Below are positions 2,634-57,325 of a DNA stretch of 64,000 bases, piece by piece. Position 1 is the stretch's first letter, and each line of letters begins with the position of its first letter. The DNA is taken from IMG/VR virus record IMGVR_UViG_3300028592_000004, positions 1 through 64,000 of that record; one strand, written 5' to 3'. The notes beneath the pieces were generated by a model. It was not told where the DNA came from, made no database searches, and saw only the letters and a program-made list of their open reading frames with translations. The position numbers and the translations under genes were made by a program.

Positions 2634-2653
2634 TTCAATCCGCGGGTTTTGAT
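2634..2653. promoter_or_regulatory. 20-bp TTCAAT-N8-ATTGAA site, copy 1
   Basis: TTCAATCCGCGGGTTTTGAT at gene junction. Confidence 0.7.
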
Positions 2654-3042
2654 CAGGCCTTGGCAGGATAGTAGCCCTCGGGCGGTGCGTGGGCCTCCCA
2701 GAAGGAGTCCTTCTCACCGTTCCAGTAGTTGGCCTGCTGGAGCATCTGCAAGGAGTGCTCCTGATCGTCCGACAGGAGCAGGAGCATGCCAATCCGGGCG
2801 ACCGAAGTGGTGATCTTCCGGCGACGCTCCGAATCGCTGGAAGCGAAGTTAGCGCCGTCCATGAAGTCAGACAGCGCCATCTCCAGGTCGTCGAGTGCTC
2901 GATCCTTCGCCCAGAGGATCCCGGCTTCCGGCATGGAAACGGTCTTCATTCGATTTCCTTCAATACAGCTGCCAAAGGCCCCGGTCGCTTCAGTCAGGGC
3001 CTGCTCCAGCTTCGTCTTTGCCTCGTCGATCCGGGTCGCCAT
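2653..3042 (-). CDS. Hypothetical helical protein
   Basis: ORF in the same-strand gene run. Confidence 0.6.
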   Translation of the reverse strand: MATRIDEAKTKLEQALTEATGAFGSCIEGNRMKTVSMPEAGILWAKDRALDDLEMALSDFMDGANFASSDSERRRKITTSVARIGMLLLLSDDQEHSLQMLQQANYWNGEKDSFWEAHAPPEGYYPAKA

Positions 3043-3904
3043 AGCGTCGCTTCTTGAGGAGTCGAACGGCCGCTGCCGGGTTCAGCAGCGTGAAGAAGAT
3101 CAGATGAGTCGGCTCTCCGGTGAGAAAGGTCCCATCCGGGTGCGGATCGTGGACATAGTCGAAGCCCATGAGGCCACGACAGCGTCCGACAACCGCGTGC
3201 CGACCAGTCGTGCATTCCCGCGGCGAGTTCCCGATGATGATCACTGGGGCCTGGCGCGGGACAGGGTAGAGGATCGGACGGTCGTCGAGAATCAACTCGA
3301 TGGCCTGGAGTCCGAAGCCAGCCAGCCACTCCTGAAACACGTCCCAGTCCCAGGAGTCGCCGTCGCAGGCGGTCGGAACGTGCTCGACAGGGACGTCCAG
3401 CACGGTCGCGACACAAGCCCGGAAACAGCTCGTCGGGGTCGGCTGCGTCACCCGGATGGCCACAGGCACCAGTGTACGGGCAGTCAGCTGCTCCGTTAGC
3501 ACACTAATGTCATTGCAGGCCGCGTCCCAGCAAGCCTTCATGGCTCGGGCGTCGGCGTGTGCCATCCGAAGCATTTTGCGGGCTGCTACGAGCGCAGGCG
3601 TCGCGTCAGGCGGCTCCGAGGACGTTTCCGCGGCCCGAATCTCTCGGGAACGCCTCAAAACGTCTCGGAGAGCCTCTCCGTGACCCATAAGCCCGCCAAA
3701 AGCCAGCTTCGCATCGGAACTCATCCATGCGAAAGCTGGCTCAGATTCAACTCTACCGATCTGTCCGAAGATCTGGGCGGCAATGCCGGCCAGCAGATCG
3801 AGGAGGAGGTTTTCGGTCGGGATCTCCGCCGCAGACCGCGCGAACGACTCGCGTGCTTCTGCGACAAGCTCGTCATAGGACTTAGAGGGTCCACTCGTCG
3901 ACAT
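2990..3904 (-). CDS. Protein with C-terminal papain-like (C39-type) cysteine peptidase domain
   Basis: Q-x5-C in VTQPTPTSCFRACVA, HAVV, VHDP: C39-like Cys/His/Asp order. Confidence 0.5.
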   Translation of the reverse strand: MSTSGPSKSYDELVAEARESFARSAAEIPTENLLLDLLAGIAAQIFGQIGRVESEPAFAWMSSDAKLAFGGLMGHGEALRDVLRRSREIRAAETSSEPPDATPALVAARKMLRMAHADARAMKACWDAACNDISVLTEQLTARTLVPVAIRVTQPTPTSCFRACVATVLDVPVEHVPTACDGDSWDWDVFQEWLAGFGLQAIELILDDRPILYPVPRQAPVIIIGNSPRECTTGRHAVVGRCRGLMGFDYVHDPHPDGTFLTGEPTHLIFFTLLNPAAAVRLLKKRRYGDPDRRGKDEAGAGPD

Positions 3905-4155
3905 CAGTTCGTGTCCAATCCGCGGATGCGATCAAACTCTTGCGGTGCGTCCTCAGGAACGGCGTCCGTGAAGGTCACCAGCCCGAGAATGTAGTGGTAG
4001 CCGTGGTAGTACATCGGCTCACAGCGGGTGATCTCGATTTTCTGCGTCTCGGGGCGAGTCAGCGAAACGATGCAGTTCTGAAACTCCACTTCGGCACCCG
4101 CTTTACTGTCCTCAAAGCCGGTGTCGATCTTCTCCAGGCGAAGTTGCGTTTTCAT
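3904..4155 (-). CDS. Hypothetical protein
   Basis: Tight packing with neighbours. Confidence 0.55.
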   Translation of the reverse strand: MKTQLRLEKIDTGFEDSKAGAEVEFQNCIVSLTRPETQKIEITRCEPMYYHGYHYILGLVTFTDAVPEDAPQEFDRIRGLDTN

Positions 4156-4156
4156 C

Positions 4157-7525: not shown

Positions 7526-7768
7526 TCAGCAGGGCTCGCCCCGCGCTGGTGGGACCATTTCAAAGAGCACCTGAACGAGCTGCTGCTCACTCAGGATCTC
7601 CGGATGCTGTCGCGCAGCCGCGATCAATCGCACCACAGCCACCGGGCCGTCCATACCACGAATGCTGTCGGCCAAATCGTAAAGCGACGTCGTGTCTGCG
7701 TTCGGAAAGGAGCGGTAGTTCGAAAACGACTCCTTGGCGTTGAGAATCAGCGTCGAGAGACCGTTCAT
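7526..7768 (-). CDS. Hypothetical protein
   Basis: ATG 2 nt after 20-bp site. Confidence 0.5.
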   Translation of the reverse strand: MNGLSTLILNAKESFSNYRSFPNADTTSLYDLADSIRGMDGPVAVVRLIAAARQHPEILSEQQLVQVLFEMVPPARGEPC

Positions 7769-7770: not shown

Positions 7771-7790
7771 TTCAATACCCGCGGATTGAG
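7771..7790. promoter_or_regulatory. 20-bp site, copy 2 (inverted spacer)
   Basis: TTCAATACCCGCGGATTGAG fills most of the intergenic gap. Confidence 0.75.
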
Positions 7791-7791: not shown

Positions 7792-8127
7792 TCAGAGCAT
7801 CTTCGCGGCCAAGAGCAGCGTCAGCAGGTGGAACGCATTGTCCACCACGATGCTGCTCCAAGGCCCCATGTTGTCACGGAAGCCGGCCTGGCCGGCATGC
7901 CCCATGTACCAGTGGATAAACTGGCTGCGGTCGATCGCAAAGTGCGTCGCGAACAGCCAGAAAAGCGGCAGCAACGACCAGCAGCCACTGCAGGTCGCCA
8001 CCGCCAGGGTCCAGACAAGGCAATGCACCGCACAGGGCAGTGACGCCTTCTTCTTGTTGAGGGCCATCCAGTGGTTCTGGAGCAGATAGTCCCCAACCAT
8101 GTGGCCGACAATCATCTCGGCAAGCAT
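7792..8127 (-). CDS. DUF3307-like membrane protein
   Basis: GHMVGDYLLQNHWMALNK...VHC...VDNAFHL His/Asp pattern in hydrophobic helices. Confidence 0.65.
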   Translation of the reverse strand: MLAEMIVGHMVGDYLLQNHWMALNKKKASLPCAVHCLVWTLAVATCSGCWSLLPLFWLFATHFAIDRSQFIHWYMGHAGQAGFRDNMGPWSSIVVDNAFHLLTLLLAAKML

Positions 8128-15028: not shown

Positions 15029-15387
15029 GGCTTCAGTCGCTCCTTGAAGGCCTCGACCTTCTTGTTGAACGCGGCCTCCTCACGACGAGCCGCGGCGTCA
15101 CTGCTCCCCGTTCCCAGGAAGTCGAGGTAGCCGGCAGCCTCCTCCATGATGGCGAGGAAGTCCGTCAGCAGTGAGTGCTTGAACCAGCTGATGTCACCTG
15201 TGGTGAGCCCGCGGTGGGCATTCCAGCTGGTGACGAGCCGCTCGTAGACCTCTTTGGTGTCGGGGTTCGTGCGCAGCTCACTGTTTGCCCATCCGTTTGC
15301 AACGAGCTGACCCTCGGTCGTCTCAATGCACAGAGGGTTGTTGGGGTCGATCCGTAGTTCGAGGTTGCGGAGGTCCTTGTCTCTCAT
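15025..15387 (-). CDS. Hypothetical protein (ERL-x-x-x-WNA family)
   Basis: YERLVTSWNAHRGL. Confidence 0.6.
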   Translation of the reverse strand: MRDKDLRNLELRIDPNNPLCIETTEGQLVANGWANSELRTNPDTKEVYERLVTSWNAHRGLTTGDISWFKHSLLTDFLAIMEEAAGYLDFLGTGSSDAAARREEAAFNKKVEAFKERLKP

Positions 15388-15860
15388 CCGATCACCACCT
15401 CTTTCGCGTAGAGGGACTGCGCCTGCTCATCGAGTTCTGCGTAGTCGAGTTTGGCATCGTCACAGGCATGCCGGGCTTCGGCAAGAACTGTAAGGATCGC
15501 CAGCTCGGTGGTCTCCACGCCGAGCTGGATGCGGAGTTGTGCGAAGAGCTTCCGCGCCCGCAGCGTGTGCGGATCGACAGGCTCCTCCAGCGCCTCGGCA
15601 GGGAACTTCAGCTTGTGGCGGGTACACAAGGCCTTGATCGGAGTGATCGCAGCCTTGAGCTTCGCCTCTGTCGCTGTCGTCGGCTCCTGAATCAGAGCCA
15701 CGAGCTTCTGGACAGCCTTCTGTGGCGCCTTCCAGTAGGCCCAGCCGTCTGAGTTGGCGTCGACAAGGTCTTGAAACTCGGACAGCAGGCGGGTTGCGCG
15801 ACCGAGGACGGGATGCGACTTGTGTCGATCCGCAGCCTCGCTCACTTCCCAGGTGTTCAT
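15384..15860 (-). CDS. Hypothetical phage protein
   Basis: NSDGWAYWKAP motif. Confidence 0.6.
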   Translation of the reverse strand: MNTWEVSEAADRHKSHPVLGRATRLLSEFQDLVDANSDGWAYWKAPQKAVQKLVALIQEPTTATEAKLKAAITPIKALCTRHKLKFPAEALEEPVDPHTLRARKLFAQLRIQLGVETTELAILTVLAEARHACDDAKLDYAELDEQAQSLYAKEVVIG

Positions 15861-19545: not shown

Positions 19546-20057
19546 CCGGACGCTCCTCCCGAGATGATGGGCTTCGTCTCGACGTACTCCTCGATCTGCA
19601 CGTGATCGTAGTAGGAGTCGTCATTCGAGTTGAAGATCCACCACTGGTTCTCCTTCTGGAGACGGGCGATCGGTTGGAACGTACCGCCGCCGGATCGCAT
19701 GCCCGGCAGATCATTGTTCGCGAAGCGGACCGTTGAGAATGGCCCCTCGACACGTCGGTCCTTGACGTCGACCTTGTCCCAGAAAGCGACCTGGAATCGC
19801 GTGGACCTCTCCTGCGGCGATGCGAACGCCGGCGAGGTCAGCTGGTTCACGAGGTGCTCGGCGTGCTGGGCGAGCCAACCGTTGCACAGTCGGTGAAGCG
19901 CGTTCGGAGTTTCCAGCAGCACGGCCTCCATCACTCCGGGTGTGACGTGGTCCCGCATCAGGTGGTAGATGAACGCGACCAGCGGCGGGTACTCCACCTC
20001 CAGCCCGCCAGAGGCAGCCACCAGCTTTTCACGGGAATCAGTTCTCGTCAGCGTCAT
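19542..20057 (-). CDS. Hypothetical protein
   Basis: GAGG before MTLTRTD. Confidence 0.55.
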   Translation of the reverse strand: MTLTRTDSREKLVAASGGLEVEYPPLVAFIYHLMRDHVTPGVMEAVLLETPNALHRLCNGWLAQHAEHLVNQLTSPAFASPQERSTRFQVAFWDKVDVKDRRVEGPFSTVRFANNDLPGMRSGGGTFQPIARLQKENQWWIFNSNDDSYYDHVQIEEYVETKPIISGGASG

Positions 20058-20337
20058 CGTCTTCCTCGGTTTCGTCGAGTTCTTCCAGGTCCGCTTCCAG
20101 CTCTTGCAACTCCTCCCCGATCTCTTCGGCGTAGTTCTCCTCGACTGAGAACAGCAGCGTATGGATCGAAAACTCACCGTTACGATGAGCGAGGTGGCAC
20201 AAGTCGACCATCAGATCCGTGATGGCACTCATGGGATCCGCGGTCAGCACTGAGGGGTGATCCCCGCAGGCTTTCACGAATGTTTCGAGCGCTTCCTGCG
20301 CCCAGTCAGCCCGTTGGTCGTTCGTGGGCGTTGTCAT
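20038..20337 (-). CDS. Small acidic protein
   Basis: C-terminus EEIGEELQELEADLEELDETEEDDDADEN. Confidence 0.6.
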   Translation of the reverse strand: MTTPTNDQRADWAQEALETFVKACGDHPSVLTADPMSAITDLMVDLCHLAHRNGEFSIHTLLFSVEENYAEEIGEELQELEADLEELDETEEDDDADEN

Positions 20338-20780
20338 GATGGCTTCTCGGGAGCAGGAATCGGTTCAAGCCGAGTCCGCTCGATGAACTTTTTCGCGGCG
20401 GACGCCAACGCGTTCCACTGCTCAGTGCTGACCTGGACTTTCGTCCAACCGTCTGCCCCGGGGTGACTCATACTTTCAGCCAGAACTCCAGCCACCCGCC
20501 GCACGATCTGGATCGCCTGGTGGGCATCGGAAAGATCGTCATACTGCGGTCGGAACTGCTGTACGGCGAGATCGTCTTCCCACCGGTCGTCGAACATCTG
20601 CATGATGTCGTACTGCACGGTCCCCATCCGTTCGAACAGTTCTCGCAGGTGGAATGCGAGTCTGGCACGCTCTGAAGCGTAGGTCGTAGGTGGGGACAGT
20701 TCTTTGACGACCTCTCTGATCAGGTCGGCGCCGGCGCAGGCCTCCGCTACCCGAGCCAGCAATTTAGTTGCCAGGGCCAC
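20334..20780 (-). CDS. Hypothetical protein
   Basis: AAGGAGG before GTG. Confidence 0.6.
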   Translation of the reverse strand: MALATKLLARVAEACAGADLIREVVKELSPPTTYASERARLAFHLRELFERMGTVQYDIMQMFDDRWEDDLAVQQFRPQYDDLSDAHQAIQIVRRVAGVLAESMSHPGADGWTKVQVSTEQWNALASAAKKFIERTRLEPIPAPEKPS

Positions 20781-20795
20781 GTGGCCCTCCTTTCA

Positions 20796-21119: not shown

Positions 21120-21130
21120 GTCGATTCTCC

Positions 21131-21601: not shown

Positions 21602-21603
21602 GA

Positions 21604-22520: not shown

Positions 22521-22521
22521 G

Positions 22522-23176: not shown

Positions 23177-23196
23177 TTCAATGCGCGGGTATTGGA
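23177..23196. promoter_or_regulatory. 20-bp site, copy 3
   Basis: TTCAATGCGCGGGTATTGGA, intergenic. Confidence 0.75.
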
Positions 23197-30781: not shown

Positions 30782-30801
30782 TTCAATGCGCGGGTATTGA
30801 A
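30782..30801. promoter_or_regulatory. 20-bp site, copy 4
   Basis: TTCAATGCGCGGGTATTGAA spanning upstream stop, 8 nt before next ATG. Confidence 0.8.
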
Positions 30802-34580: not shown

Positions 34581-34581
34581 G

Positions 34582-35830: not shown

Positions 35831-35850
35831 TTCAATCCGCGGGTATTGAA
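35831..35850. promoter_or_regulatory. 20-bp site, copy 5
   Basis: TTCAATCCGCGGGTATTGAA, intergenic, directly upstream of GGAG RBS. Confidence 0.85.
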
Positions 35851-37365: not shown

Positions 37366-37482
37366 AGTGGCCTCCTAGGGCGTTGAGAAAGTTGCCCACG
37401 TGGTCTCCAAAATCCGGTTTCATTTGTCAACAAGACCGGTTTTGGGCGATTTTCCTGGAACTATTTCGATTTTCTGTCCGAG

Positions 37483-38301: not shown

Positions 38302-39685
38302 GGAAGTTCCTTCGCACTTCGTCGAACGTGTAGCGCCGCAGGATCTGCCCGTTTCGGAAAACAGGCATGAGTTCGCTGGGCGCGTCGGGCGGTGCCGAGT
38401 CGTAGGTGACCCCGGCGCGGAGAGCGACCCGGCCAACATGGCTCTTCTTGCCAGAGTCGGTGATCGGGTCCTTGAAGATGTTGACGTTGCGACCGTTCCG
38501 CGTGATCTGCGTGGCCTTGATCGCCATCCCCAGAGTGTCCCGCGTGCCGGCCCGGAGCAGACCACCAGCTCCGATGACGATATTCGATCCGTCGTACCCA
38601 GAGCCGACAGAGCGAATCAGCGTCTCCTCGTACCGCTGATGGTACATCCCGTCCCCGTAGATCAGCCCGATCTTCGGATTCAAGATACGGTACGGACTGT
38701 CGGCCAGCCGCTCGCTGCCGAACAACTCGTCCAACAGGACCAGCACACCCTTGGCCTCCGGCGTACCTGGCTCAGCCTTGGCATCACCGCAGATGATGTC
38801 CGGCGGGTAACCGCTATCGGGACGGATGATGACCCGACCGTTACGGGCAAGGATCTTGTCCTTCAGCCGCGGCAGAATGTTCGTACAGACGTGCCAGATC
38901 GAGTAGGTGTCCGAGACGATGGAAACGTAGCCGTCCGGATACAACTCCAGCATCCGCTCGAACGCCTCGAACTCGAACTCGCGACCGTAGGAGCACATGA
39001 CAGAGTGCTCGGAGGCGGGCACAGACATCATGCACGGCGATTCCGTTGGGAGGCTGTAGTACTCCTCAATGAACGGCTCGGCCACGATCGTGTCGCTGCC
39101 GCGGAACACGATGAGATGCGCTGCGCCGGAGATTGCCGCTGACTCCTCAGACGTGTCGCTCCGGTAGCCGAAGTCGTGCACGTTGAATTCCAGAGGCTGT
39201 CGCGAGTAGCGACGAGCGATTCGGTAATACTCCAGACTGTTTGTCGCGACGGTGCAGGGATACCACACCTTCAGCAGCAACGATTCCAGAAAGCCCGGCG
39301 CCCACGGGAAGTCGTCGTGCGTCGACTCCAGCGTGAGCAGGGCATTCTTCACCGGCAGGACGGTGCCCTCAGGCACGGCGCTGATCTCGACAGGCCACTG
39401 ACCGAGGTCAGCGATGCCGTGGAGCTTCTCCTTGATGTCGTCGCTCGGCTCGGACCCGAGGATCCGCCGACGCCGCTTGAGGAAGTCCTCGACGTTGGCC
39501 GTCGTGATGGGCTGAGTCAAGTACTCCATCAGGTAGTACTGCAAGCCGAAGAACAGGAGCTCCTCGAAGTACTTGTCGCTTCGGGCGTTCAGATACGAAA
39601 TCACCCGGGTGGTCCCGGGTGCGTACTGTTCCATGTGGCCCATCTTGTAGACGTCAGTCCGCAGAAGCGGGTGAACTAGCTTCAT
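38282..39685 (-). CDS. nadV: Nicotinamide phosphoribosyltransferase-like protein (possible Namat of NARP1)
   Basis: TDVYKMGH-x-x-QY, HDFGYR, ASEHSVM, SIVSDTY, IIRPDSG, IYGDG, KDPITD-x-GK-x-S. Confidence 0.92.
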   Translation of the reverse strand: MKLVHPLLRTDVYKMGHMEQYAPGTTRVISYLNARSDKYFEELLFFGLQYYLMEYLTQPITTANVEDFLKRRRRILGSEPSDDIKEKLHGIADLGQWPVEISAVPEGTVLPVKNALLTLESTHDDFPWAPGFLESLLLKVWYPCTVATNSLEYYRIARRYSRQPLEFNVHDFGYRSDTSEESAAISGAAHLIVFRGSDTIVAEPFIEEYYSLPTESPCMMSVPASEHSVMCSYGREFEFEAFERMLELYPDGYVSIVSDTYSIWHVCTNILPRLKDKILARNGRVIIRPDSGYPPDIICGDAKAEPGTPEAKGVLVLLDELFGSERLADSPYRILNPKIGLIYGDGMYHQRYEETLIRSVGSGYDGSNIVIGAGGLLRAGTRDTLGMAIKATQITRNGRNVNIFKDPITDSGKKSHVGRVALRAGVTYDSAPPDAPSELMPVFRNGQILRRYTFDEVRRNFHASVQF

Positions 39686-39694
39686 GACTCGCTT

Positions 39695-40087
39695 TCATTC
39701 GATGTCGATGCCTCGCACGTTTGTTGGCGAGGCTGGTGGAGGAGGTGATTCAGGCGACAACATAGCCTGACGCTGCAGAAAGTCGAGCAAGGCGACAGCC
39801 TGAGAACGTGTCACAGGTTTCATCGCCGTCAGCTGCTCAGTGCCGCGAACCCAGACCTCGAACTTCACGGGGTCTGTTTCGATGATGAGGTTGAGTCGGC
39901 CGAAGCGGAGTGAAAAGCCAGAAGCCGACTGCGAATGCTTCGGTCCTGGATCCTGGTCAGCGAAGACAGCCAACGCATTCGCCTGCGGACCAGTCATCAG
40001 CAGAACAAGATCGACATCGGAGTTGGGCTTTGGCGATCCGTAGACGCGACTCCCTGTCAGGATAGCGTTCGGCCGCAGGTCAGGCAC
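39695..40087 (-). CDS. Minimal nucleotidyltransferase (MNT)-like protein
   Basis: ILTGSRVYG...SDVDLVLL. Confidence 0.7.
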   Translation of the reverse strand: MPDLRPNAILTGSRVYGSPKPNSDVDLVLLMTGPQANALAVFADQDPGPKHSQSASGFSLRFGRLNLIIETDPVKFEVWVRGTEQLTAMKPVTRSQAVALLDFLQRQAMLSPESPPPPASPTNVRGIDIE

Positions 40088-43116: not shown

Positions 43117-45333
43117 TTACGAGTTAAGTCCGTAGTGCCAGCGGATTTCTTTCTGCCAATCTGAGCCGTACTTCGCACGGAAGACGTCTCTGGCAGCCGC
43201 GGCATCACAAATCTGGTGATGAGCGATCTGGTCGCCCCTTTGACCGTCCAAGTATACCCGACGCGAGCGATAATGGAACACGAAGCACCGGTCTGTCAAT
43301 AGAACCCGGAATCCGTCATCCCGAGCCCGCTTCTGAAGTTCGTGGCCTGCGCCAAATCCACTCAGTGGAAAGTCCTCGTCCAGGAGGCCCACGCGATCAA
43401 ACACAGACCGGGAAACCATCATGGCCTCAGTCGAAACGACGGGGCATTCTTCAGTCGTCACGCCAGCTTCGTAGTGGTGGATATCACCGAAATGTCCACG
43501 GTTCTGCAACTCCTGAGCGTTCGACACAGCGGCGATGATTCCATCCGCAGGCTGCGGGTGGTCATGAGCGACGACAGCCATCTCGTGAAAGAAGCCTGCG
43601 CTCAGAGCCACGTCATTGTGCAGCAGCAGAAAACGGTCGTATGCCGGATTCGGCATAACCGATTCCAGAGCCATGTTGACTGCCTTCGACCAGCCGATGT
43701 TCTTGCCCGGCACCAGTACAGTCTCGTCAGCAACAGCGTGGTAGTCCCCACTGTTGTCGACCACCACGACCGGTAACCCGGCGTCCCGCGCCTTATGCAC
43801 GAGCCCGGTCGTCATGTCGTGATACTTGAAGGTGACGATGATCACGACAATTCGGCCTGCTGTCTTCTCCGCTGGGTCGAGCCACTGGTCGTCCAGCCGT
43901 TTGAGCATTCGCCTCAGCGACTGACGACGGACATTGAGGCGGTGCCCCATGTCCCGCTCAACCTGATGATTGTCGAGAGCGACGTGGTTGCAGTGGCCGA
44001 CCACAACCGTCTTTGCATGCTTGGAGAGTACGCGAAGCTCGCGGCCCCGGACGTGCCCCAGCCGGTACATGAGCTCGTACTTGTCGTTGTTGCCAAAGCT
44101 GATGTCCTCCCGGAATTGCTCCTTCGTCAACCCGCGGAAAGCAAGCATGCACTCCGTGGCCGGCGACAGCACGTGACCTGACTGCGATGTGCGCTGACAA
44201 GGGATCGAGTAGTAGCGGCGGCTCTGATGCTGCTCACAACCCTGCCGGAACGCCTCCCACTGCCGATCGGTGAAGAACGTGTCACCATCGAAGACGACTG
44301 TCACCTGAGCCACGAGCGAGCCGTACCAGATCCCGAGGTTGCGAGCCCGGTTGATCTGGATGGCCCGCACGACCTTCTGTGCGGTCGACTTGGCCTTGCG
44401 GTAGGCGTGAGGAGAGAACGGCAGTTCCATCCAATGCCGCTGGTACTTCTCCAGCAGCTCGATGTACTTTGCGCGAAGCTCCTCGTTGTGGAGCGAGTTC
44501 ACGATGTAGATCTCGTGACAGTCCTCTTGAGCCGGCATCTGGAGAATGTGCTCCAGCGTGGCTAGCCGTGAGCCCGCGTTGTCCCGCGGCGGCAGCTCGT
44601 TGCCGACGATCCGCACGACGCAGAACGAGAACTTACGGAGCACCTCTTTGCCAGGCAGCTCCACCTTGTGATTTCGGGATCCACGGCGCCGAATCGTGAC
44701 GAACTGATTCGGCGGTCCGTGGTGGATGAACCCGGGTCCCAGAACGTGGCCCTTCACCTTGTGCTTCCACAAGACATAGGGCAGGCTGATCTGGTCCCGG
44801 TAGGAACCACGGGCGATCTCTTTCCACCAGGAGGCCAAGATCGGAGCCGCGGCGCGATCGGCGATCAGAACGCCTGTCTCGAAGTGGTCTCCCTTGTCAG
44901 GGAACCCTTCCTTGCGATACCGGCGGAGTTGGCGGTTCTGAATACCGCTCTTGTCCCACCCGTCACGGTTGATGCAGTCGACCTCCTGGGCCACAGAGTG
45001 AACCAGGGGCCGGCGGAAGGCCGCAATCGGCCCGTGGAGCTTCATGTCCCGAAAGACCGCCAGATCCATCTTGGCGATCAGGTTCGAGTCCATCCAGACG
45101 ACGCGTTTCGCCCTCGGGAAGAGCCTCAGGATGTGGGTCTTGTGCCACCGGGCGGTCCGGCGGGACGGCAGCGCCACGTCGATCGTAGGGACCGCAATCC
45201 AGCCTTTCCGTCCCATTCGCTCACGAACCGTAGGATCGGAGCAGAAAGCAATGCACGGGTATTGAACAGACGGCACCCGTGGAATGACATCGGTCGCCCC
45301 GATCATCGCCGTGACAAAGACCAAGTCGTCCAT
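43117..45333 (-). CDS. Three-domain glycosyltransferase (DUF616/TOD1-MUCI70-like, GT-A-like, GT2-like)
   Basis: RWHK...VVWMDSN...RDQISLPYVLW; VVFDGD; VVVVDNSG...NIGWSKAVN...LLLHND...FDRVGLLDEDF. Confidence 0.75.
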   Translation of the reverse strand: MDDLVFVTAMIGATDVIPRVPSVQYPCIAFCSDPTVRERMGRKGWIAVPTIDVALPSRRTARWHKTHILRLFPRAKRVVWMDSNLIAKMDLAVFRDMKLHGPIAAFRRPLVHSVAQEVDCINRDGWDKSGIQNRQLRRYRKEGFPDKGDHFETGVLIADRAAAPILASWWKEIARGSYRDQISLPYVLWKHKVKGHVLGPGFIHHGPPNQFVTIRRRGSRNHKVELPGKEVLRKFSFCVVRIVGNELPPRDNAGSRLATLEHILQMPAQEDCHEIYIVNSLHNEELRAKYIELLEKYQRHWMELPFSPHAYRKAKSTAQKVVRAIQINRARNLGIWYGSLVAQVTVVFDGDTFFTDRQWEAFRQGCEQHQSRRYYSIPCQRTSQSGHVLSPATECMLAFRGLTKEQFREDISFGNNDKYELMYRLGHVRGRELRVLSKHAKTVVVGHCNHVALDNHQVERDMGHRLNVRRQSLRRMLKRLDDQWLDPAEKTAGRIVVIIVTFKYHDMTTGLVHKARDAGLPVVVVDNSGDYHAVADETVLVPGKNIGWSKAVNMALESVMPNPAYDRFLLLHNDVALSAGFFHEMAVVAHDHPQPADGIIAAVSNAQELQNRGHFGDIHHYEAGVTTEECPVVSTEAMMVSRSVFDRVGLLDEDFPLSGFGAGHELQKRARDDGFRVLLTDRCFVFHYRSRRVYLDGQRGDQIAHHQICDAAAARDVFRAKYGSDWQKEIRWHYGLNS
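45247..45266. promoter_or_regulatory. Variant of 20-bp site inside 5' end of GT gene
   Basis: AGCAATGCACGGGTATTGAA. Confidence 0.4.
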
Positions 45334-46913: not shown

Positions 46914-47974
46914 AGGGGTTCCCTTTCGGAAAGCAGATCGAGCCAGCGCTTCTTGAAAAGCTGTTCGGATTTGACGGCCGTCGCGCCACACCCATTCTGC
47001 AGGTGATTCAAGACGCGCACGTTGTTGGAAAGGAGCATGACCGAATCGGCAACAAGTTGCGGGTCCACCTTCACAGTCGGAATGTGGCCGCAGTTATCTT
47101 TGAGGCGACCCTCAAACAGGATCCCGTCTTCACCATCGGTTAGCAGCTGATTGATCGGCGGGTTGTTCGGCGCTACAACGGGCGTACCGCTTCGTACCGA
47201 GAGGTACGGCATGAGACCAAAGATCTCTTGAGCCACCGGGAACACCGTCACGTCGTGAGCAGCCAGGGCCAGCAGCTGATCCGTATACGAAGCAAACCGG
47301 ACCAGATCCAGTCGGCCGCGGACCTGACGCGACATCCGCTTGAGCAGGACATCCGCCCCGGAGGACAAACGACCGTGCAAGATCGTCAGGCCCACTCGTG
47401 GATTCTCCAGAAGCGAATTGCAGACGTCGAAGAACGACTGGTCGACGAACTCAGTCTGAGAGTACGTCAGAGGGATCAGCACCCGAAACAGGGACAGATC
47501 CTTCTTGGGCAGCTTTCGCTGTTGTGGCCGCGGTGGAGCCCAAGGGACATGGAAGGGGCTGCCGTAGTCATAGCGGCGTCGCAGGACCATCTTCGCTGCA
47601 GCGTTCGGCGCGACAACGAAGTCGAACTTCTTCAGCAGATCCTTCCAGTTCCCAGCGTCCTCATGCCACTGATAAACGAAGATCGTCCGAATCTTCTGCC
47701 GCTTAACCCACTCAACTTGAGCGATGGCGTGGGTGGGATCGTCATCTGGCAAGTTGGCCCAGATAACGACTTCCTGCTTGCGAGCCCACTCAGCAAAGCG
47801 AAGGCGTTTGTGATTGAAAACACTCTTGTCCCACTCCGGTCGCACGACAGGGATTTGTCGCAGCGACGTATGGAACGTGACAGTCATGCCGCGCTGATAG
47901 AGGAAGTCGGCAAGCGCGAGCACGGCCAGAGTTGAGTCCTGACGCTGGTAACGCAAGCAGATTCCAACATTCAC
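46907..47974 (-). CDS. GT-B (GT4-like) glycosyltransferase
   Basis: DFVVAPN; HDVTVFP...EIFGL...LSVRSGTPVV...LLTDGEDGILF. Confidence 0.75.
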   Translation of the reverse strand: MNVGICLRYQRQDSTLAVLALADFLYQRGMTVTFHTSLRQIPVVRPEWDKSVFNHKRLRFAEWARKQEVVIWANLPDDDPTHAIAQVEWVKRQKIRTIFVYQWHEDAGNWKDLLKKFDFVVAPNAAAKMVLRRRYDYGSPFHVPWAPPRPQQRKLPKKDLSLFRVLIPLTYSQTEFVDQSFFDVCNSLLENPRVGLTILHGRLSSGADVLLKRMSRQVRGRLDLVRFASYTDQLLALAAHDVTVFPVAQEIFGLMPYLSVRSGTPVVAPNNPPINQLLTDGEDGILFEGRLKDNCGHIPTVKVDPQLVADSVMLLSNNVRVLNHLQNGCGATAVKSEQLFKKRWLDLLSEREPLC

Positions 47975-48750
47975 TTTCCGCCTCCGAGAACGGTCAGACA
48001 CTTTGAGCGGTGCATGATTCGAACCGGACCATCGCCAAAGTGGAAGAACCGACTCTCGGCCTCAATCTTAGGGAGCATCTCGCGAATTGAGGAGCGGCTA
48101 GGCGCCTTTGTTCGCACGTTGGCCCATAGTCGGTCGTGATCCCAGGTGTTTTGACCGTGACAAACACGCATGTACAGCCAGGGTTTTCCCTTAACCCAGG
48201 AGAGGCTGTCAAGGTCGATCCCGTCGCGAATGACGGAATCCTCGCCAATCCGTTGCTCGGGATAGAGGAGCGGAAGGGGGACCCGGTGGATGATCGTGCC
48301 CGGAATGAACTTCTTCCGGTAGTCGCGAACGATCACCGAATCCCAGGAAACAACATGCAGCTCGCGATCCGCAGGAAACCAGTAAAGCTGAGACGTCAGG
48401 AACGAGGCGGTGATCGACGGCCCATGCGTCGCCAGCTGCGTGAACAACCGGTTCGGATGCGACTGGTCATCATCGTCCCACTGGACTGCGAGCGGCGTCT
48501 GGACGGCGTTGACGGCGATCTGCCTCAGGAAGCCCAACGTTTGCTTCTCCGAGTGGATGATTCTCACCTTCAACCCGTAGCCGTCGCAGAGCTTCAGCAG
48601 CAGATCCTGGTCACGAGGCGTGAAGTCGTCTTCGACAACGATGAGCTGACTAACGCGATGAGTCTGGCGACTCAAGCTGGCCAAGCTCCATTGAACCATC
48701 GGCAGGCGGGAAGCCTGCGTGACCATGAGCGCGGTGATTGCTTGCGACAT
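47971..48750 (-). CDS. GT2-family glycosyltransferase
   Basis: SLSRQT, LIVVEDD, TLG-x-LRQIAV, QWDDDDQSHPNRL. Confidence 0.8.
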   Translation of the reverse strand: MSQAITALMVTQASRLPMVQWSLASLSRQTHRVSQLIVVEDDFTPRDQDLLLKLCDGYGLKVRIIHSEKQTLGFLRQIAVNAVQTPLAVQWDDDDQSHPNRLFTQLATHGPSITASFLTSQLYWFPADRELHVVSWDSVIVRDYRKKFIPGTIIHRVPLPLLYPEQRIGEDSVIRDGIDLDSLSWVKGKPWLYMRVCHGQNTWDHDRLWANVRTKAPSRSSIREMLPKIEAESRFFHFGDGPVRIMHRSKCLTVLGGGK

Positions 48751-49441
48751 CTCGACCCTCATCGAATAGGAGACCTCGACGGCCCCATTGAATGCTAGGG
48801 ATCTTGTGTCGTCCGAGGGTGCTCCACTCATTTCCAGTGTGATCCACAAGGCTGGGAACGTGGACCAGGATAGGAAGTCGAAGCTCGACACGGAACACGT
48901 TCCCGACGAGAACGTCCACCTTGCGGTGGCTGTCGTGCTTCTGGAAGCGAGGGTGAGCCAGCAGGGCGTTGGCGGATTCTCGCGGCATGCAGATGGCCAG
49001 GGCGCCCACGAACGCGTTGTCGTGGAACGTCGCTTCCTGCCAATGATCAGGCTCACGAACCTTTTCCCGCTGGTAATGCGGGACCATCTTCGGGCTCGTG
49101 TAAGGCGACAGGAAGCCCACGGTCGGATGCGGAGAGAACGCATCCTTGAGGATGTCCGCCGCTCCGGGACGCCAGACATGGTCGTCCTGAAGCATCAGGA
49201 TCCAGCTGGCATTCGTATGCGTCAGAAGATGGTGCACACCGCGCTTCCAGTTCGGAAAGCACCCGAGCGGATGATCCGAAGGAAGCCATTCGCAGCTGTC
49301 CACGAGCTGAGGCCGCTCCATCGGTTCAGCGAAGACGTGGATCGTCTCGCTGAAGCCGGCCTCACGGATACTGCGAAGCGTCTTGAGAAGGAGAGACCGC
49401 GGACGAAACGCGGTCTGGATTCCAATCGCGAGCGACTGCAT
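48650..49441 (-). CDS. GT-A-fold glycosyltransferase-like protein
   Basis: LGCFPNW, WILMLQDD, PSLVDHTG-x-x-WST. Confidence 0.65.
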   Translation of the reverse strand: MQSLAIGIQTAFRPRSLLLKTLRSIREAGFSETIHVFAEPMERPQLVDSCEWLPSDHPLGCFPNWKRGVHHLLTHTNASWILMLQDDHVWRPGAADILKDAFSPHPTVGFLSPYTSPKMVPHYQREKVREPDHWQEATFHDNAFVGALAICMPRESANALLAHPRFQKHDSHRKVDVLVGNVFRVELRLPILVHVPSLVDHTGNEWSTLGRHKIPSIQWGRRGLLFDEGRDVASNHRAHGHAGFPPADGSMELGQLESPDSSR

Positions 49442-51457: not shown

Positions 51458-51477
51458 TTCAATGCCCGCGGATTGAA
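51458..51477. promoter_or_regulatory. 20-bp site, copy 6 (inverted spacer)
   Basis: TTCAATGCCCGCGGATTGAA, 23 nt upstream of portal ATG. Confidence 0.8.
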
Positions 51478-51642
51478 CTACGAACGCCGAATCCGGTCCT
51501 TGGCTCGTTCGAGCAGGTCCCGGCGATACTCAGCCTGGTTGTCCTCTGCGGACTTGGACCGTGGCTGCGGCGTCGGGCGTGTCTCAGTCGGACGGTCGTC
51601 AAGGTCGGGCGTGTGTGCTCCGATATCAGCGCGTTTGATCAT
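51478..51642 (-). CDS. 54-aa hypothetical protein
   Basis: Own translation MIKRADIGAHTPDLDD... Confidence 0.5.
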   Translation of the reverse strand: MIKRADIGAHTPDLDDRPTETRPTPQPRSKSAEDNQAEYRRDLLERAKDRIRRS

Positions 51643-52627: not shown

Positions 52628-52675
52628 GTGAATCCTTTCCTTGGGACGCCGGCATCATAGCCAGAGGCAATAGCT

Positions 52676-52725
52676 AAAGAAAAGCACGGATTGCCCGGTC
52701 CCGGTCGGGACCGGGCATCTGTGCT
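52676..52725 (-). terminator. Intrinsic terminator
   Basis: TGCCCGGTCCC-GGTC-GGGACCGGGCA stem, extendable, followed by TTTTCTTT on minus strand. Confidence 0.8.
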
Positions 52726-55070: not shown

Positions 55071-55711
55071 TTGAGATTCACTCCTGACATCGTGCCGGAT
55101 AGGACCTTCTCTGCCAGCTCCACAGTCTCGGGACGGACGGGCAGCGGCATCAGCTTAACCGCTACACCCTGTCCCACGTTTACGTCAGAGAAAGAGCGAT
55201 GGCAGTCCGTTGCGTCCACACCATACGCGACAACGTCGATCGTCGGCAACGGGGAAGGAACGACACCAGGCTTCAGCATGATGACCGGATCGAACACCTT
55301 CACCTGCTGAGCGAAGGTCCGCATGAACCGCTTACGGACTCGGTCGACACCGGCGACCTGGGCCAACGCGTGGCTGATCGTTGAGAAGTGCTTGTGCGGT
55401 GTGGCCAGGAGTCGACGGTTCCAGACCGCGAACTCCGAGCTGTGTTTGTTCGGGACGTAGATGTTCGAGAAGAGCATCACTGGGTAGTCGAGGACGGCCA
55501 CGACAACTTCCAGAGAGCTCTCATTGATGATGTCCTGAAGGGGATCGGTGTCGAACCCACCCCAGGTGAAAAGAGCCCCATGCGTGAAGAACGCGTAGTC
55601 GACAGCGAGATCAGACAAGGACACCGCCGTGGAATGGCGTAGGGGCGCGAGATCCTCGGGATCGTTGTCGCGATCGATCTGACTGACGCCTTCACGCATG
55701 GGGGTGGACAT
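55067..55711 (-). CDS. Hypothetical protein
   Basis: ATG 2 nt after upstream stop. Confidence 0.6.
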   Translation of the reverse strand: MSTPMREGVSQIDRDNDPEDLAPLRHSTAVSLSDLAVDYAFFTHGALFTWGGFDTDPLQDIINESSLEVVVAVLDYPVMLFSNIYVPNKHSSEFAVWNRRLLATPHKHFSTISHALAQVAGVDRVRKRFMRTFAQQVKVFDPVIMLKPGVVPSPLPTIDVVAYGVDATDCHRSFSDVNVGQGVAVKLMPLPVRPETVELAEKVLSGTMSGVNLK

Positions 55712-55713
55712 AA

Positions 55714-56316
55714 CTAGCTCCCGAGCAGACCACTCAGCTTCGCAAGGGCCATCGCCTGTTTGGCTGCCCGTTCGGCGAGGTCTTCGACCTCAGAGTAGGT
55801 GATCTTGAGATCACCGAGAAGGTTCTCGCGAGGGACGAAATCCTCTTCGCCCGAACGAATGATCGCCTTGTACGGATCGACCAGGCCGCAGTCGATTTCA
55901 CCCCAGTGGCGAACGGGGTGAACCCAGAACCGTTCGGGAGGGAGCGTGGCGCGTTCCGTCAGCAAGCTGTGGAGCGCTGCGATCCGGAACAGGGCGTTGA
56001 CCTCGAAGCCGAGGATCCGCTGCGTCTCTTGGACGACCATCTTGTGGCCGAAGTCCGCCAGCTTGACCCCAGCATCGTCACCGGCAGCCCGGGCGACCAG
56101 CTCGCCAGTCGGGCCAACGGCACACCAGCTGTCGATCTTGCTCTTGCCGGGCATCGTAAAGGTCTCGACGTACTTCTTCTGCAGCCATTCGCCCTGCTTG
56201 GGAGCGCTGTACGTCGACGGCGGGGCAGGCATAAACGTGTCTTCGAGCGCCTTGAGCGGAATCGAGACAAACCCAAAGGCAATCGCCGATGGGAGGGGAC
56301 GGGTTGACTTGCTCAC
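55714..56316 (-). CDS. Hypothetical protein
   Basis: GTGA overlap start MSKSTRP. Confidence 0.6.
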   Translation of the reverse strand: MSKSTRPLPSAIAFGFVSIPLKALEDTFMPAPPSTYSAPKQGEWLQKKYVETFTMPGKSKIDSWCAVGPTGELVARAAGDDAGVKLADFGHKMVVQETQRILGFEVNALFRIAALHSLLTERATLPPERFWVHPVRHWGEIDCGLVDPYKAIIRSGEEDFVPRENLLGDLKITYSEVEDLAERAAKQAMALAKLSGLLGS

Positions 56317-57305
56317 AGAATGAGTCCTGAGGAAACGCCGACCAGACCGGCGGGCACCTGCACCGTAATGTCCCCCATCATCCCCAGGTGGACATCGGCA
56401 ATGCCGTCTCTGATCGAACCAATGGAAAGAACACGGAGATCGGCATGCTGCCGAACTTCCGCTTCCCCGGGGATCTCCCAGGGAACACCAGCCAGTCGTC
56501 CGCCGGGGATCCCAGCGAAGACGGCACAACCATACTTCTTCGAGGCTCGCGAGAGGCGCTTCATCGCCTCCGGAATGCTCTTGTTGAAGAGCGTCAGATC
56601 TTCCAGCACGATCAGGTCAATCTTGCCCTTGAGGTAGATCGAAGCCGTGTCGAGCAGTTCATTGAGTTTGTTCGCTCCAGCGTTCTTCCACAGCTTCTCG
56701 GCATAGGAGGCCAGGAAAGGACTGTCGGTCAGCTCGGAAGCGGAGGTGAAGGCCACGACACGTTGCCGGTCATAGCCCTTCGTATCCGGAGGCATCAGCA
56801 GAGCCCCCTCCATTGCCTTTCGGCAGATGAAGGTCAGCACATCCGGATGGCCAGCCAGGACAGTCGGTCGCTTCCGATCCACAATCATGAAGCCGACGTT
56901 GATGTCCTTGCTGAGACGATACGTTTCGAGGTCGCCGTGCTTGGCGCGGATCGCGTCCTCCTCAGCAGCCCTCTTCTCCTCCATCCGCTTGGTCAGGTAG
57001 GGGAGAACGCTACCACGGAGCGTCGTGAGCATGTCGTCCATCTCGAATGGCTGGGCGCCAGCATTGAGGGCAGACTGCATCAGAATAAAGGCGTACTTCT
57101 CGACCGCAGCCGGCGAGAACTTATCGACAGGAATCGTTCCTGGCTGCTGAAGGAGCTCAACCACTAGGTCCCGAGCAACGGCGTAAACCTGCTCGGCCAT
57201 GACGGCGATCTGGAAAGCAACATTGAGCTTCGGGTTGCCCTTGATCAGGGCCACCAGCTCACGTCCGCCTTCCAGCAGTTCGTCCTTGGAGTACTTCTCT
57301 GCCAT
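56313..57305 (-). CDS. Protein with degenerate RecA/DnaB-like ATPase domain
   Basis: TVLAGHPDVLTF (no GKT), DLIVLEDL, RLSRASKKYGCAVFAG. Confidence 0.4.
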   Translation of the reverse strand: MAEKYSKDELLEGGRELVALIKGNPKLNVAFQIAVMAEQVYAVARDLVVELLQQPGTIPVDKFSPAAVEKYAFILMQSALNAGAQPFEMDDMLTTLRGSVLPYLTKRMEEKRAAEEDAIRAKHGDLETYRLSKDINVGFMIVDRKRPTVLAGHPDVLTFICRKAMEGALLMPPDTKGYDRQRVVAFTSASELTDSPFLASYAEKLWKNAGANKLNELLDTASIYLKGKIDLIVLEDLTLFNKSIPEAMKRLSRASKKYGCAVFAGIPGGRLAGVPWEIPGEAEVRQHADLRVLSIGSIRDGIADVHLGMMGDITVQVPAGLVGVSSGLIL

Positions 57306-57325
57306 TTCAATTCCCGCGTTTTGAT
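57306..57325. promoter_or_regulatory. 20-bp site, copy 7 (inverted spacer)
   Basis: TTCAATTCCCGCGTTTTGAT spanning MTase stop and abutting next ATG. Confidence 0.65.

What the first reader, a model, noticed from the sequence alone, without database searches (positions are those of the whole stretch)
2634..57325. Dispersed 20-bp site with inverted arms and a conserved asymmetric 8-bp spacer at seven gene junctions
Seen: TTCAAT-N8-ATTGAA at 2634, 7771, 23177, 30782, 35831, 51458 and 57306, plus a variant at 45247. Read in the direction of transcription, the downstream arm is ATTGAA in all seven junction copies. The spacer is ACCCGCG[GC] in copies 1, 3, 4 and 5 and close to its reverse complement in copies 2, 6 and 7. 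In six copies an ATG follows within 0-23 nt, including the portal ATG. Known: inverted arms around a conserved asymmetric 8-bp core is the architecture of loxP/FRT-type recombination sites, whereas most repressor operators tolerate spacer changes. Inference: (a) the operator of a phage-encoded dimeric regulator that coordinates accessory, replication and portal genes, or (b) a cassette-boundary recombination site. Spacer conservation in both orientations argues for a dsDNA site rather than an RNA hairpin. No cognate regulator or recombinase was recognised in the window.
Basis: partly seen in the sequence, partly recalled or inferred. Interest (0 to 1): 0.85.

Follow-up and report, generated by a model that had tools for sequence, protein, structure and literature searches.

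The report
Start-adjacent 20-bp palindrome in jumbo phage
An uncultivated 229-kb phage carries at least 16 copies of a 20-bp palindromic DNA word placed just before gene starts, most likely the docking site of an unidentified dimeric DNA-binding protein; similar unexplained repeats are already known from other phages.

Summary
The window holds exactly eight copies of TTCAAT-N8-ATTGAA: three perfect and five with 1-2 arm mismatches. All eight have the same G+C-rich core. They score 27-36 bits on a weight matrix built from these and five further copies, against 9.4 bits for the next best position, so the gap partly reflects that construction. The window is the first 64 kb of a 229-kb uncultivated jumbo phage. 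Eight more copies lie in a further 81 kb that I fetched.

Twelve or thirteen of the 16 copies end 0-23 nt upstream of a start codon (P about 2e-13), even where the upstream gene runs through the motif. The arms vary independently: there are no compensatory changes, and the RNA hairpins are weak (0 to -5 kcal/mol). The asymmetric core points either way relative to transcription. Nothing outside the 20-22 bp is conserved. This pattern fits a dsDNA site for a dimeric protein, not an RNA hairpin, a sigma-70 promoter or a loxP/FRT-type site.

Pfam found no regulator, recombinase or RNA polymerase in the 145 kb read. Relatives with 50-59% portal identity lack the motif, as do bacterial genomes.

The closest known analogues are the dispersed start-associated palindromes of Cluster O mycobacteriophages and Cluster EG Microbacterium phages, whose function is also unsolved. 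I file it as a new member of that kind, of moderate interest.

The parts
2634..2653 (.). Copy 1. On the gene (minus) strand it reads ATCAAA ACCCGCGG ATTGAA. Its first base is the A of the TGA stop of ORF 2653-3042. It is followed by an 11-bp-stem hairpin (about 2591-2624) with a T-rich tail. The next called start is at 2530, 103 nt away.
   Evidence: (30.8 bits)
7771..7790 (.). Copy 2, core reversed: CTCAAT CCGCGGGT ATTGAA. It fills the 23-nt gap between the DUF3307 gene (7792-8127) and an 80-aa ORF (7526-7768). The ATG is 2 nt after the motif.
   Evidence: (33.0 bits)
23177..23196 (.). Copy 3: TCCAAT ACCCGCGC ATTGAA. An ATG lies 4 nt downstream (23172); the gene caller prefers a start at 23130.
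   Evidence: (31.1 bits)
30782..30801 (.). Copy 4: TTCAAT ACCCGCGC ATTGAA. The TGA inside ATTGAA is the stop of ORF 30783-31109, so the whole motif is coding for the upstream gene. AGGA and then the ATG (30773) follow 8 nt after the motif.
   Evidence: (34.9 bits)
35831..35850 (.). Copy 5, the consensus copy: TTCAAT ACCCGCGG ATTGAA. It sits in a 41-nt gap. GGAG and then the ATG (35820) follow 10 nt after the motif.
   Evidence: (36.4 bits)
45247..45266 (.). Copy 6, a variant: TTCAAT ACCCGTGC ATTGCT. It is the weakest copy in the window. It lies inside the 738-aa glycosyltransferase-like ORF as called (43117-45333); an alternative in-frame ATG lies about 30 nt downstream.
   Evidence: (26.9 bits)
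51458..51477 (.). Copy 7, core reversed: TTCAAT CCGCGGGC ATTGAA. It starts right after the TAG stop of a 54-aa ORF (51478-51642). The portal ATG (51434) is 23 nt downstream, preceded by AAGGA.
   Evidence: (33.3 bits)
57306..57325 (.). Copy 8, core reversed: ATCAAA ACGCGGGA ATTGAA. It lies in the last codons of the N6/N4 DNA methyltransferase gene (57307-58164), whose TGA stop is inside ATTGAA. The ATG of the next ORF (56313-57305) abuts the motif.
   Evidence: (28.7 bits)

Best explanation
The motif is a phage-specific, start-codon-adjacent binding site on double-stranded DNA. Its 20-bp near-palindrome, TTCAAT-N-C-S-C-G-S-G-N-ATTGAA, consists of two 10-bp half-sites. Each half-site is probably read by one subunit of a dimeric sequence-specific protein that the phage itself most likely encodes.

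About one copy per 9 kb sits at the 5' edge of a cistron. Occupancy would therefore control expression of roughly 25 scattered genes together, spanning nucleotide metabolism, DNA modification, portal and unknown functions. The likely routes are blocking or pausing RNA polymerase as it enters the gene (a roadblock or 'stoperator'-like action), or occluding a start site that lies within the motif.

Shown here:
- the motif is real and dispersed;
- it is tied to start codons;
- its arms evolve as independent half-sites;
- its core orientation is unrelated to transcription direction;
- it is confined to this phage lineage.

Inferred, not shown:
- that a protein binds it;
- that the protein is a dimer and phage-encoded;
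- that the outcome is transcriptional control.
For: - Non-random and clean: 8 copies in the window against 1.08 expected. A weight matrix built from the copies gives 27-36 bits for them and 9.4 for the next best position.
- Genome-wide: 16 copies in the 145 kb read of the 229-kb contig.
- Start-associated: 12-13 of 16 end 0-23 nt upstream of a start codon. The chance for one site is 0.047, giving P about 2e-13.
- Placement is set by the downstream start. In window 30782 and 57306, L130:5725 and L034:9285 the upstream ORF runs through the motif. In window 2634, L129:7804 and L132:655 the upstream stop codon is made by an arm mismatch.
- Half-site behaviour: 0 compensatory changes, 16 of 96 arm cells unpaired, and paired fraction 83.3% against 85.3% in shuffles.
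- Weak RNA folds: 0 to -5.1 kcal/mol, with three copies not folding at all. Rfam has no match.
- Core orientation is 7 forward and 9 reversed relative to gene direction. This is expected for a site read on duplex DNA and not for an RNA loop.
- No conserved flank beyond 20-22 bp, so no attached -35/-10 element.
- No bacterial genome among 185,579 species representatives has more than one exact copy. This argues against a host regulon, though weakly.
- Published analogues were interpreted the same way (PMC4351075, PMC3203893).
Against: - No DNA-binding protein was identified. Precomputed and fresh Pfam and PHROG scans of the genes in 145 kb show no HTH, RHH, ParB, sigma factor or repressor.
- No promoter is visible next to the sites, so it is unclear what an operator would operate on. 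The sigma-70 scan of 20 kb found none on the gene strand.
- A pure roadblock does not explain why copies prefer the 3' end of the upstream gene over the 5' end of the downstream gene.
- The strict rule that core positions 9 and 12 carry the same base (14 of 16) is odd for a symmetric homodimer.
- Three copies are intragenic.
- No relative carries the motif, so conservation under divergence could not be tested. All other assemblies of this phage are 98.6-100% identical.
Confidence: 0.45

Rival explanations
1. The 20-bp word is itself a phage-specific promoter or initiator, recognised by a phage-encoded or phage-modified RNA polymerase factor. Transcription would start inside or just after the motif, giving mRNAs with very short leaders.
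For: - It is the only strongly enriched intergenic word; ATTGAA is the top 6-mer.
- No sigma-70-like promoter lies on the gene strand in 20 kb.
- Its position 0-23 nt before start codons would give leaders of about 7-40 nt.
- Relatives carry their own conserved promoter-like words, such as CGGCATTATAAT in L028.
Against: - A palindrome would fire in both directions, yet almost all genes run one way.
- Copy 2634 is followed at once by a terminator-like hairpin.
- In copies with 0-2 nt spacing, the only possible Shine-Dalgarno (GGGA) lies inside the motif. The start would then have to be in its distal half.
- TTCAAT lacks the A at position 2 of a -10 hexamer, and its T6 is the base most often lost.
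- No phage RNA polymerase or sigma factor was seen in 145 kb.
Confidence: 0.15
2. The element acts in the mRNA, as a translational operator or processing signal next to the ribosome-binding site. It would be bound by an RNA-binding protein such as the phage's own CsrA homologue, or cut by RNase E at G-G/A-U-U.
For: - It lies in the ribosome-binding region of 12-13 cistrons.
- The phage encodes a clear CsrA (Pfam E = 1.9e-15; L035:8288-8479).
- GGA occurs inside the motif in 9 of 16 copies, and AGGA directly follows it in 4 more.
- All four copies with 0-2 nt spacing have the G-rich half of the core next to the ATG, where it can serve as a Shine-Dalgarno. This shows the motif is transcribed in those cases.
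Against: - The RNA differs between the two core orientations (loop ACCCGCGG against CCGCGGGU).
- There is no covariation, and 16 of 96 arm cells are mispaired.
- Folds are weak or absent.
- The distal arm and the palindromy have no role in a sequence-only RNA site.
- GGA is missing from 7 of 16 motifs.
Confidence: 0.12
3. It is a DNA site for a non-transcriptional transaction. Candidates are site-specific nicking, replication or packaging landmarks, or a ParB/KorB/Noc-like centromere or spreading protein.
For: - The copies are dispersed at about one per 9 kb.
- The palindrome has A+T arms around a CCCG(C/G)G core, in the style of the Noc and ParB/KorB sites as I recall them from the literature; this is a lead, not a test.
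- The downstream genes share no functional class.
Against: - The tight link to start codons is not expected for such sites.
- No ParB, nickase or partition protein was seen by Pfam in 145 kb.
- Nick sites known from other phages are strand-specific (from memory), whereas the core here faces either way.
Confidence: 0.1
4. It is a cassette-boundary site for a site-specific recombinase (loxP/FRT/attC-like), or a short repeat that merely promotes illegitimate recombination.
For: - It has inverted arms around an asymmetric core kept in 14 of 16 copies.
- In Cluster O phages, recombination between such repeats has produced deletions (PMC4351075).
Against: - The arms are 6 bp, not 11-13 bp, with no conserved flank.
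- No integrase, resolvase or transposase was found in 145 kb.
- Both orientations occur in a genome whose genes almost all run one way.
- Assemblies from different samples are colinear across the window copies.
- Copies 51458 and 57306 lie at junctions that are syntenic in relatives without the motif.
Confidence: 0.05

Closest known systems
Cluster O mycobacteriophage 17-bp palindrome, TGTTCGG-NNN-CCGAACA (Cresawn et al. 2015, PMC4351075)
   Same: - It is a short dyad repeat with more than 30 dispersed copies per genome.
- Many copies lie in short intergenic gaps or at gene 5' ends, and some are intragenic.
- The central asymmetry (TTT/AAA) faces either way relative to transcription.
- It is absent from the M. 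smegmatis and M. tuberculosis genomes checked and from other mycobacteriophages.
- The authors infer a dimeric DNA-binding protein and cannot name its effect.
   Different: - Here the layout is 6-8-6 rather than 7-3-7.
- The core here is G+C-rich, conserved and asymmetric by choice; an even-length core could have been symmetric.
- The arms here are less invariant.
- The host phylum is unknown, and the genome is a 229-kb uncultivated phage.
- The tie to start codons is tighter here (12-13 of 16).
Cluster EG Microbacterium phage 18-bp inverted repeat, GATCAACC-NN-GGTTGATC (Jacobs-Sera et al. 2020, PMC7302621)
   Same: [quoted passage not shown] The function is unknown.
   Different: The sequence differs and the spacer is shorter. 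That repeat is conserved across three diverged phages, whereas no diverged relative with the present motif was found.
Start-associated sequences (SAS) and extended SAS of Cluster K mycobacteriophages (Pope et al. 2011, PMC3203893)
   Same: - The repeats lie within a few nt of start codons.
- The upstream stop codon sometimes lies inside the repeat.
- The extended SAS are inverted repeats whose departures do not preserve RNA pairing. They were read as protein sites on DNA.
   Different: - SAS is asymmetric, has one orientation and contains the Shine-Dalgarno.
- The extended-SAS arms are 17 bp with a variable spacer.
- Here a single fixed 20-bp palindrome does not itself contain a canonical Shine-Dalgarno.
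Stoperators of Cluster A mycobacteriophages (PMC9283540, PMC6550527)
   Same: They are many dispersed repressor sites at gene junctions that stop elongating RNA polymerase. This is a working model for how a junction site without a promoter can regulate.
   Different: Stoperators are 13-14 bp, asymmetric, bound by a monomer and oriented one way relative to transcription. The present motif is symmetric and faces both ways. No repressor or integrase is known here.
loxP/FRT-type tyrosine-recombinase sites (established knowledge)
   Same: They have inverted arms around an 8-bp asymmetric core.
   Different: Their arms are 13 bp and a recombinase gene is present. Here the arms are 6 bp and no recombinase was found. 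The many copies in both orientations would be destructive.

Membership tests
Dispersed start-associated inverted repeats of phage genomes (Cluster O / Cluster EG type) | Short (17-20 bp) dyad-symmetric word present many times in one phage genome | tested here: met
   16 copies in the 145 kb read, 8 of them in the window. Copies score 25-36 bits and background at most 15.6.
Dispersed start-associated inverted repeats of phage genomes (Cluster O / Cluster EG type) | Copies lie mostly in short intergenic gaps a few to about 25 nt upstream of start codons | tested here: met
   12-13 of 16 lie within 0-23 nt of a start, P about 2e-13.
Dispersed start-associated inverted repeats of phage genomes (Cluster O / Cluster EG type) | Departures in the two arms do not preserve base pairing, and central asymmetry has no fixed orientation to transcription | tested here: met
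   0 compensatory changes. Core orientation is 7 forward and 9 reversed.
Dispersed start-associated inverted repeats of phage genomes (Cluster O / Cluster EG type) | The word is absent or at chance level in bacterial genomes and unrelated phages | tested here: met
   32 single hits in 596 Gb of genomes, with none doubled. IMG/VR and metagenome hits outside this phage are single and unrelated.
Dispersed start-associated inverted repeats of phage genomes (Cluster O / Cluster EG type) | The word is conserved at the same places in diverged members of the phage cluster | tested here: inconclusive
   The only other assemblies are 98.6-100% identical. The next relatives, at portal identity 50-59%, lack it with a best score of 11.7 bits.
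loxP/FRT-type recombination site | Recombinase-binding arms of about 11-13 bp flanking a 6-8-bp core | tested here: not met
   The arms are 6 bp. Information content falls to background outside the 20-22 bp.
loxP/FRT-type recombination site | A cognate tyrosine or serine recombinase is encoded by the element | tested here: not met
   No Phage_integrase, Resolvase or Recombinase Pfam hit among the called genes of 145 kb. The remaining 84 kb were not read.
loxP/FRT-type recombination site | Recombination products (deletions, inversions, circles) exist between copies | not testable with these tools
   Reads are not available. The assemblies from different samples are colinear.
Cluster A stoperator | An asymmetric 13-14-bp site, in one orientation relative to transcription, bound by a monomeric immunity repressor | tested here: not met
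   The site is a 20-bp palindrome in both orientations, and no repressor was found.
RNA hairpin element (terminator, processing or operator hairpin) | A stable stem supported by covariation, with a U-tract for terminators | tested here: not met
   Fold energies are 0 to -5.1 kcal/mol. There is no covariation, no U-tract and no Rfam family.
Sigma-70-type promoter | -35 and -10 hexamers 16-18 bp apart upstream of the transcript start | tested here: not met
   No conserved flank. The scan found no promoter-like site on the gene strand in 20000-39999.
CsrA binding site | A GGA in the loop of a short hairpin overlapping the Shine-Dalgarno | tested here: inconclusive
   GGA is present in 9 of 16 motifs, at the loop/stem edge. 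The phage does encode CsrA.

The most novel reading that the evidence does not exclude
The palindrome is the sole cis-element of a start-site marking system in a large, uncharacterised clade-mate of about 200-230-kb soil phages. A non-HTH protein unrecognisable by sequence would bind asymmetrically; core positions 9 and 12 are always the same base, which suggests a heterodimer or an induced-asymmetry homodimer. It would bind right at the ribosome-binding region and gate both entry of RNA polymerase and translation initiation of about 25 cistrons. The core orientation would be free, except where its G-rich half must double as the Shine-Dalgarno. This would give the first mechanism for the whole class of unexplained start-associated palindromes in phages.
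Probability: 0.12. Interest if true: 0.7.

Novelty: new member of a known kind. Interest (0 to 1): 0.4.

Why it matters
Dispersed palindromes next to start codons have been catalogued in several actinobacteriophage clusters for over a decade, and none has a demonstrated function. This example extends the phenomenon to a 229-kb uncultivated phage from a very large, unstudied clade (more than 1,100 portal relatives). Its features narrow the mechanism:

- It has a fixed 6-8-6 layout.
- Its core is conserved but orientation-free.
- Its placement is dictated by the downstream start codon, even at the cost of overlapping the upstream gene.

If the binding protein were found, it would define a regulon of about 25 genes in a phage whose proteins are mostly unrecognisable. 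It might also explain the analogous repeats elsewhere. If not, the motif remains a well-documented but ordinary regulatory repeat.

Tried and rejected
- **Conservation in relatives.** A megablast of 9 kb against 50,697 phage records found nothing. Portal tblastn found only about 29% relatives. IMG/VR and the 5.8-billion-protein search gave relatives at 44-59% portal identity. Six of their loci (L026-L029, L133, L134) have no copy and no analogous palindrome that I could detect. With only 2-3 copies expected per 22-kb locus, the power to detect one is low.
- **Exact-pattern scans.** Scans of IMG/VR, JGI metagenomes and GTDB genomes returned only this phage plus single hits at about chance level. 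L008, L010 and L111 looked promising but are unrelated or inside ORFs.
- **Footprinting among strains.** Other assemblies are 98.65-100% identical. The 51 SNPs of L127 miss the 43-nt gap that holds copy 51458, but that is expected by chance.
- **Search for the binder.** I ran Pfam, PHROG and PDB sequence searches on genes flanking the copies, on small zinc-ribbon ORFs and on a PAS protein. No DNA-binding family was found.
- **Restriction-site idea.** CCGCGG (the SacII site) is not avoided elsewhere: 79 observed against 62 expected. I rejected this idea.
- **Longer repeat or mobile element.** There is no conservation beyond 20-22 bp. Rejected.
- **CRISPR lead.** One spacer in an unrelated array (L087, L093, L128) matches the motif at 20 of 21 positions but not its flanks. 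None of the other 53 spacers matches the phage. This gives no host assignment.
- **Not done.** I did not read the remaining 84 kb of the genome or run structure predictions, because there was no defensible candidate protein.

Full report
**What the window is.** The window is the first 64 kb of IMGVR_UViG_3300028592_000004, a 229,210-bp uncultivated phage contig. The same phage was assembled at 98.6-100% identity from other samples (JGI 3300028809, ENA ERZ27256794 at 229,203 bp, and a Logan run). G+C is about 60%. All 118 called genes in the window are on the minus strand, and 94% of the DNA is coding. Few proteins are recognisable. Those that are include a portal (weak PHROG hit, about 29% identity to Vibrio phage D69 and Salmonella phage Arash), an N6/N4 DNA methyltransferase, glycosyltransferases, NAMPT, PRPP synthetase, NDK, P-II and SpoU.

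**Check of the observation.** Shuffles give 0 and 1.08 respectively. All eight share a CCCGCG/CGCGGG-type core. On a weight matrix built from the copies themselves, they score 26.9-36.4 bits and the next best position in the window scores 9.4, so the family is sharply bounded. Two corrections are needed. Copy 2634 is followed by a terminator-like hairpin rather than a start. Copy 45247 lies inside the 738-aa ORF as called.

**Beyond the window.** Pattern scans and contig look-ups gave a further 81 kb of the same genome (L034, L035, L129-L132). These hold eight more copies, making 16 in 145 kb, or about one per 9 kb. With all 16:
- **Start codons.** Twelve or thirteen copies end 0-23 nt upstream of a start codon. 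The chance for one site is 0.047, so P is about 2e-13.
- **Placement.** The position is set by the downstream start, not by free space. In four copies the upstream ORF runs through the motif; three of these use the TGA inside ATTGAA as their stop, and the fourth ORF ends beyond the motif. In three other copies, the base that departs from the TTCAAT arm creates the upstream stop codon.
- **Extent.** Nothing is conserved outside 20-22 bp.
- **Arm bias.** The proximal-arm bias seen in the window is only a trend genome-wide: 5 against 12 mismatches, p = 0.13.
- **Core orientation.** The core is forward in 7 copies and reversed in 9. Positions 9 and 12 carry the same base (CC or GG) in 14 of 16, so the core is deliberately non-palindromic yet unoriented.
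- **Short spacing.** All four copies with 0-2 nt spacing have the G-rich half next to the ATG, where GGGA or GGGT can act as a Shine-Dalgarno. This is a hint (p about 0.09, my estimate) that the motif is transcribed and that its orientation is otherwise free.
- **Downstream genes.** They share no class: portal, glycosyltransferases, an HldE-like kinase/adenylyltransferase, ThyX, a 5'-nucleotidase and unknowns.

**DNA or RNA.** On the alignment of the 16 copies, the six arm pairs show 0 compensatory changes and 16 of 96 unpaired cells. The paired fraction (83.3%) is not above column shuffles (85.3%). The hairpins fold at 0 to -5.1 kcal/mol, and three do not fold at all. No Rfam family matches the window. 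The two core orientations would give different RNA loops. The arms therefore behave as independently constrained half-sites on duplex DNA.

**Promoter or not.** The copies have no conserved -35/-10 element. A sigma-70 scan of 20 kb found no site on the gene strand. ATTGAA is the most enriched intergenic 6-mer, and no second strong motif emerged. A palindromic promoter in a genome whose genes almost all run one way is hard to reconcile. So are the hairpin right after copy 2634 and the Shine-Dalgarno lying inside the motif at short spacings. An activator site centred at -41 or -55 is excluded at least for the portal: its N-terminus aligns with homologues from residue 5, and its ATG is only 23 nt from the motif.

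**Recombination site or not.** The arms are 6 bp. No integrase, resolvase or transposase appears among the Pfam hits for 145 kb. Copies face both ways. The assemblies are colinear. Copies 51458 and 57306 lie at junctions (capsid-region gene to portal, and methyltransferase to the next gene) that are syntenic in relatives lacking the motif.

**Who binds it.** This remains unknown. Pfam, PHROG and PDB sequence searches of the flanking genes, several small zinc-ribbon ORFs and a PAS protein gave no DNA-binding family. The phage does encode a clear CsrA. That keeps an RNA-level rival alive, but GGA is present in only 9 of 16 motifs. No bacterial genome among the 185,579 species representatives has more than one exact copy. 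This weakly favours a phage-encoded binder over a host regulon.

**Relatives.** The portal has more than 1,100 relatives (E <= 1e-30), many on contigs of 200-230 kb, but none above about 59% identity. Six relative loci lack the motif, with a best score of 11.7 bits. They use ordinary signals instead: a sigma-70-like CGGCATTATAAT word and intrinsic terminators. The motif is therefore specific to this lineage, and the test of conservation under divergence could not be run.

**Comparison with what is known.** The closest described features are:
- the 17-bp palindrome of Cluster O mycobacteriophages, with more than 30 copies, a centre facing either way, and an inferred dimeric binder of unknown effect (PMC4351075);
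- the 18-bp inverted repeat of Cluster EG Microbacterium phages, 14-22 bp upstream of starts (PMC7302621);
- the SAS and extended SAS of Cluster K (PMC3203893).

All tested defining features of that descriptive class are met here. Only conservation across diverged relatives could not be tested. Stoperators (PMC9283540) offer a mechanism for junction sites without promoters, but they are asymmetric, oriented and bound by monomers, so membership fails. loxP/FRT membership fails on arm length and on the missing recombinase.

**Verdict.** The feature is real and highly non-random. It is most likely a duplex-DNA docking site for a dimeric, probably phage-encoded, protein that co-regulates the genes it precedes (confidence 0.45). 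The rivals are a self-contained phage promoter (0.15), an mRNA-level operator or processing site (0.12), another DNA transaction (0.10) and a recombination site (0.05). It is a new member of a known but mechanistically unsolved kind, of moderate interest.

Noticed in passing
L035:8288-8479 (same phage, outside the window): The phage encodes a 63-aa CsrA homologue (Pfam PF02599, E = 1.9e-15). It lies one gene downstream of the best-scoring motif copy (L035:7210), with a 321-aa ORF between them. A carbon-storage-regulator-type RNA-binding protein in a phage is unusual and could act on phage or host mRNAs.
   Followed up: partly
L034:964-2589, L130:13387-14037 and L129:8720-9523 (same phage): Other unusual cargo includes a Ro60/TROVE-vWA protein, a 216-aa PAS-domain protein, a caspase-like peptidase C14, a CAP-domain protein, a sulfotransferase and a 1362-aa UDG-exonuclease-PolA fusion.
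   Followed up: no
window 23698-23714 and 25851-25867 (minus strand): Two half-motif look-alikes, (C/T)TCCAATAC(C/A)CGAGGA, sit just upstream of start codons. They have the distal arm and half of the core, but the rest is replaced by a Shine-Dalgarno. They may be decayed copies or a duplicated leader shared with copy 23177.
   Followed up: partly
window 52628-52724; L130 around 15370-15400; relatives L028, L133 and L134: A terminator hairpin followed by TTTTCTTTAGCTAT, and about 13 nt later a TATGAT-like hexamer, lies upstream of the 333-aa gene next to the portal. The same arrangement (TTAGCY, about 13 nt, TAYNNT) recurs at the syntenic place in relatives with 50-59% portal identity. It is probably a clade-wide late promoter.
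   Followed up: partly
window 23729-23851 (minus strand); L132:453-659: Gaps that look intergenic contain uncalled small CxxC...CxxC zinc-ribbon ORFs of 40 and 68 aa. The second ends with its TAA stop inside the distal arm of a motif copy.
   Followed up: partly
window, whole: AAGCTT (the HindIII site) is absent: 0 observed against about 10 expected from a Markov model. Other 6-bp palindromes, including CCGCGG, are not depleted. This may be avoidance of a restriction site.
   Followed up: no
window 47971-49441 (minus strand): Gene callers disagree here. Either there is a 695-nt gap, or there are two overlapping ORFs (48650-49441 and 47971-49179) with weak GT2 hits. This suggests a frameshifted or split glycosyltransferase just downstream of the portal.
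   Followed up: no
L087, L093:about 1760-1830 and L128 (metagenome contigs Ga0255342, Ga0255346 and Ga0255347): A CRISPR array of 50 or more spacers (35-nt repeat beginning GTTTGCCGCCC) holds one spacer that matches the motif at 20 of 21 positions but not the flanks of any copy read. No other spacer matches the phage. It may be chance, or it may target an unseen relative.
   Followed up: partly
L133:14406-15575 (relative, 59% portal identity): A tubulin-family (PhuZ/TubZ-like) gene lies close to the portal in a 205-kb relative. I did not see one in the 145 kb read of the present phage.
   Followed up: no
L132:18163-18182 (inside the PolA gene) and L035:660-679: Two good motif copies (25 and 32 bits) lie inside called ORFs. 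The one in PolA is followed 18 nt later by an ATG preceded by GAGAGGG. It could mark an internal start or a mis-called gene boundary.
   Followed up: no
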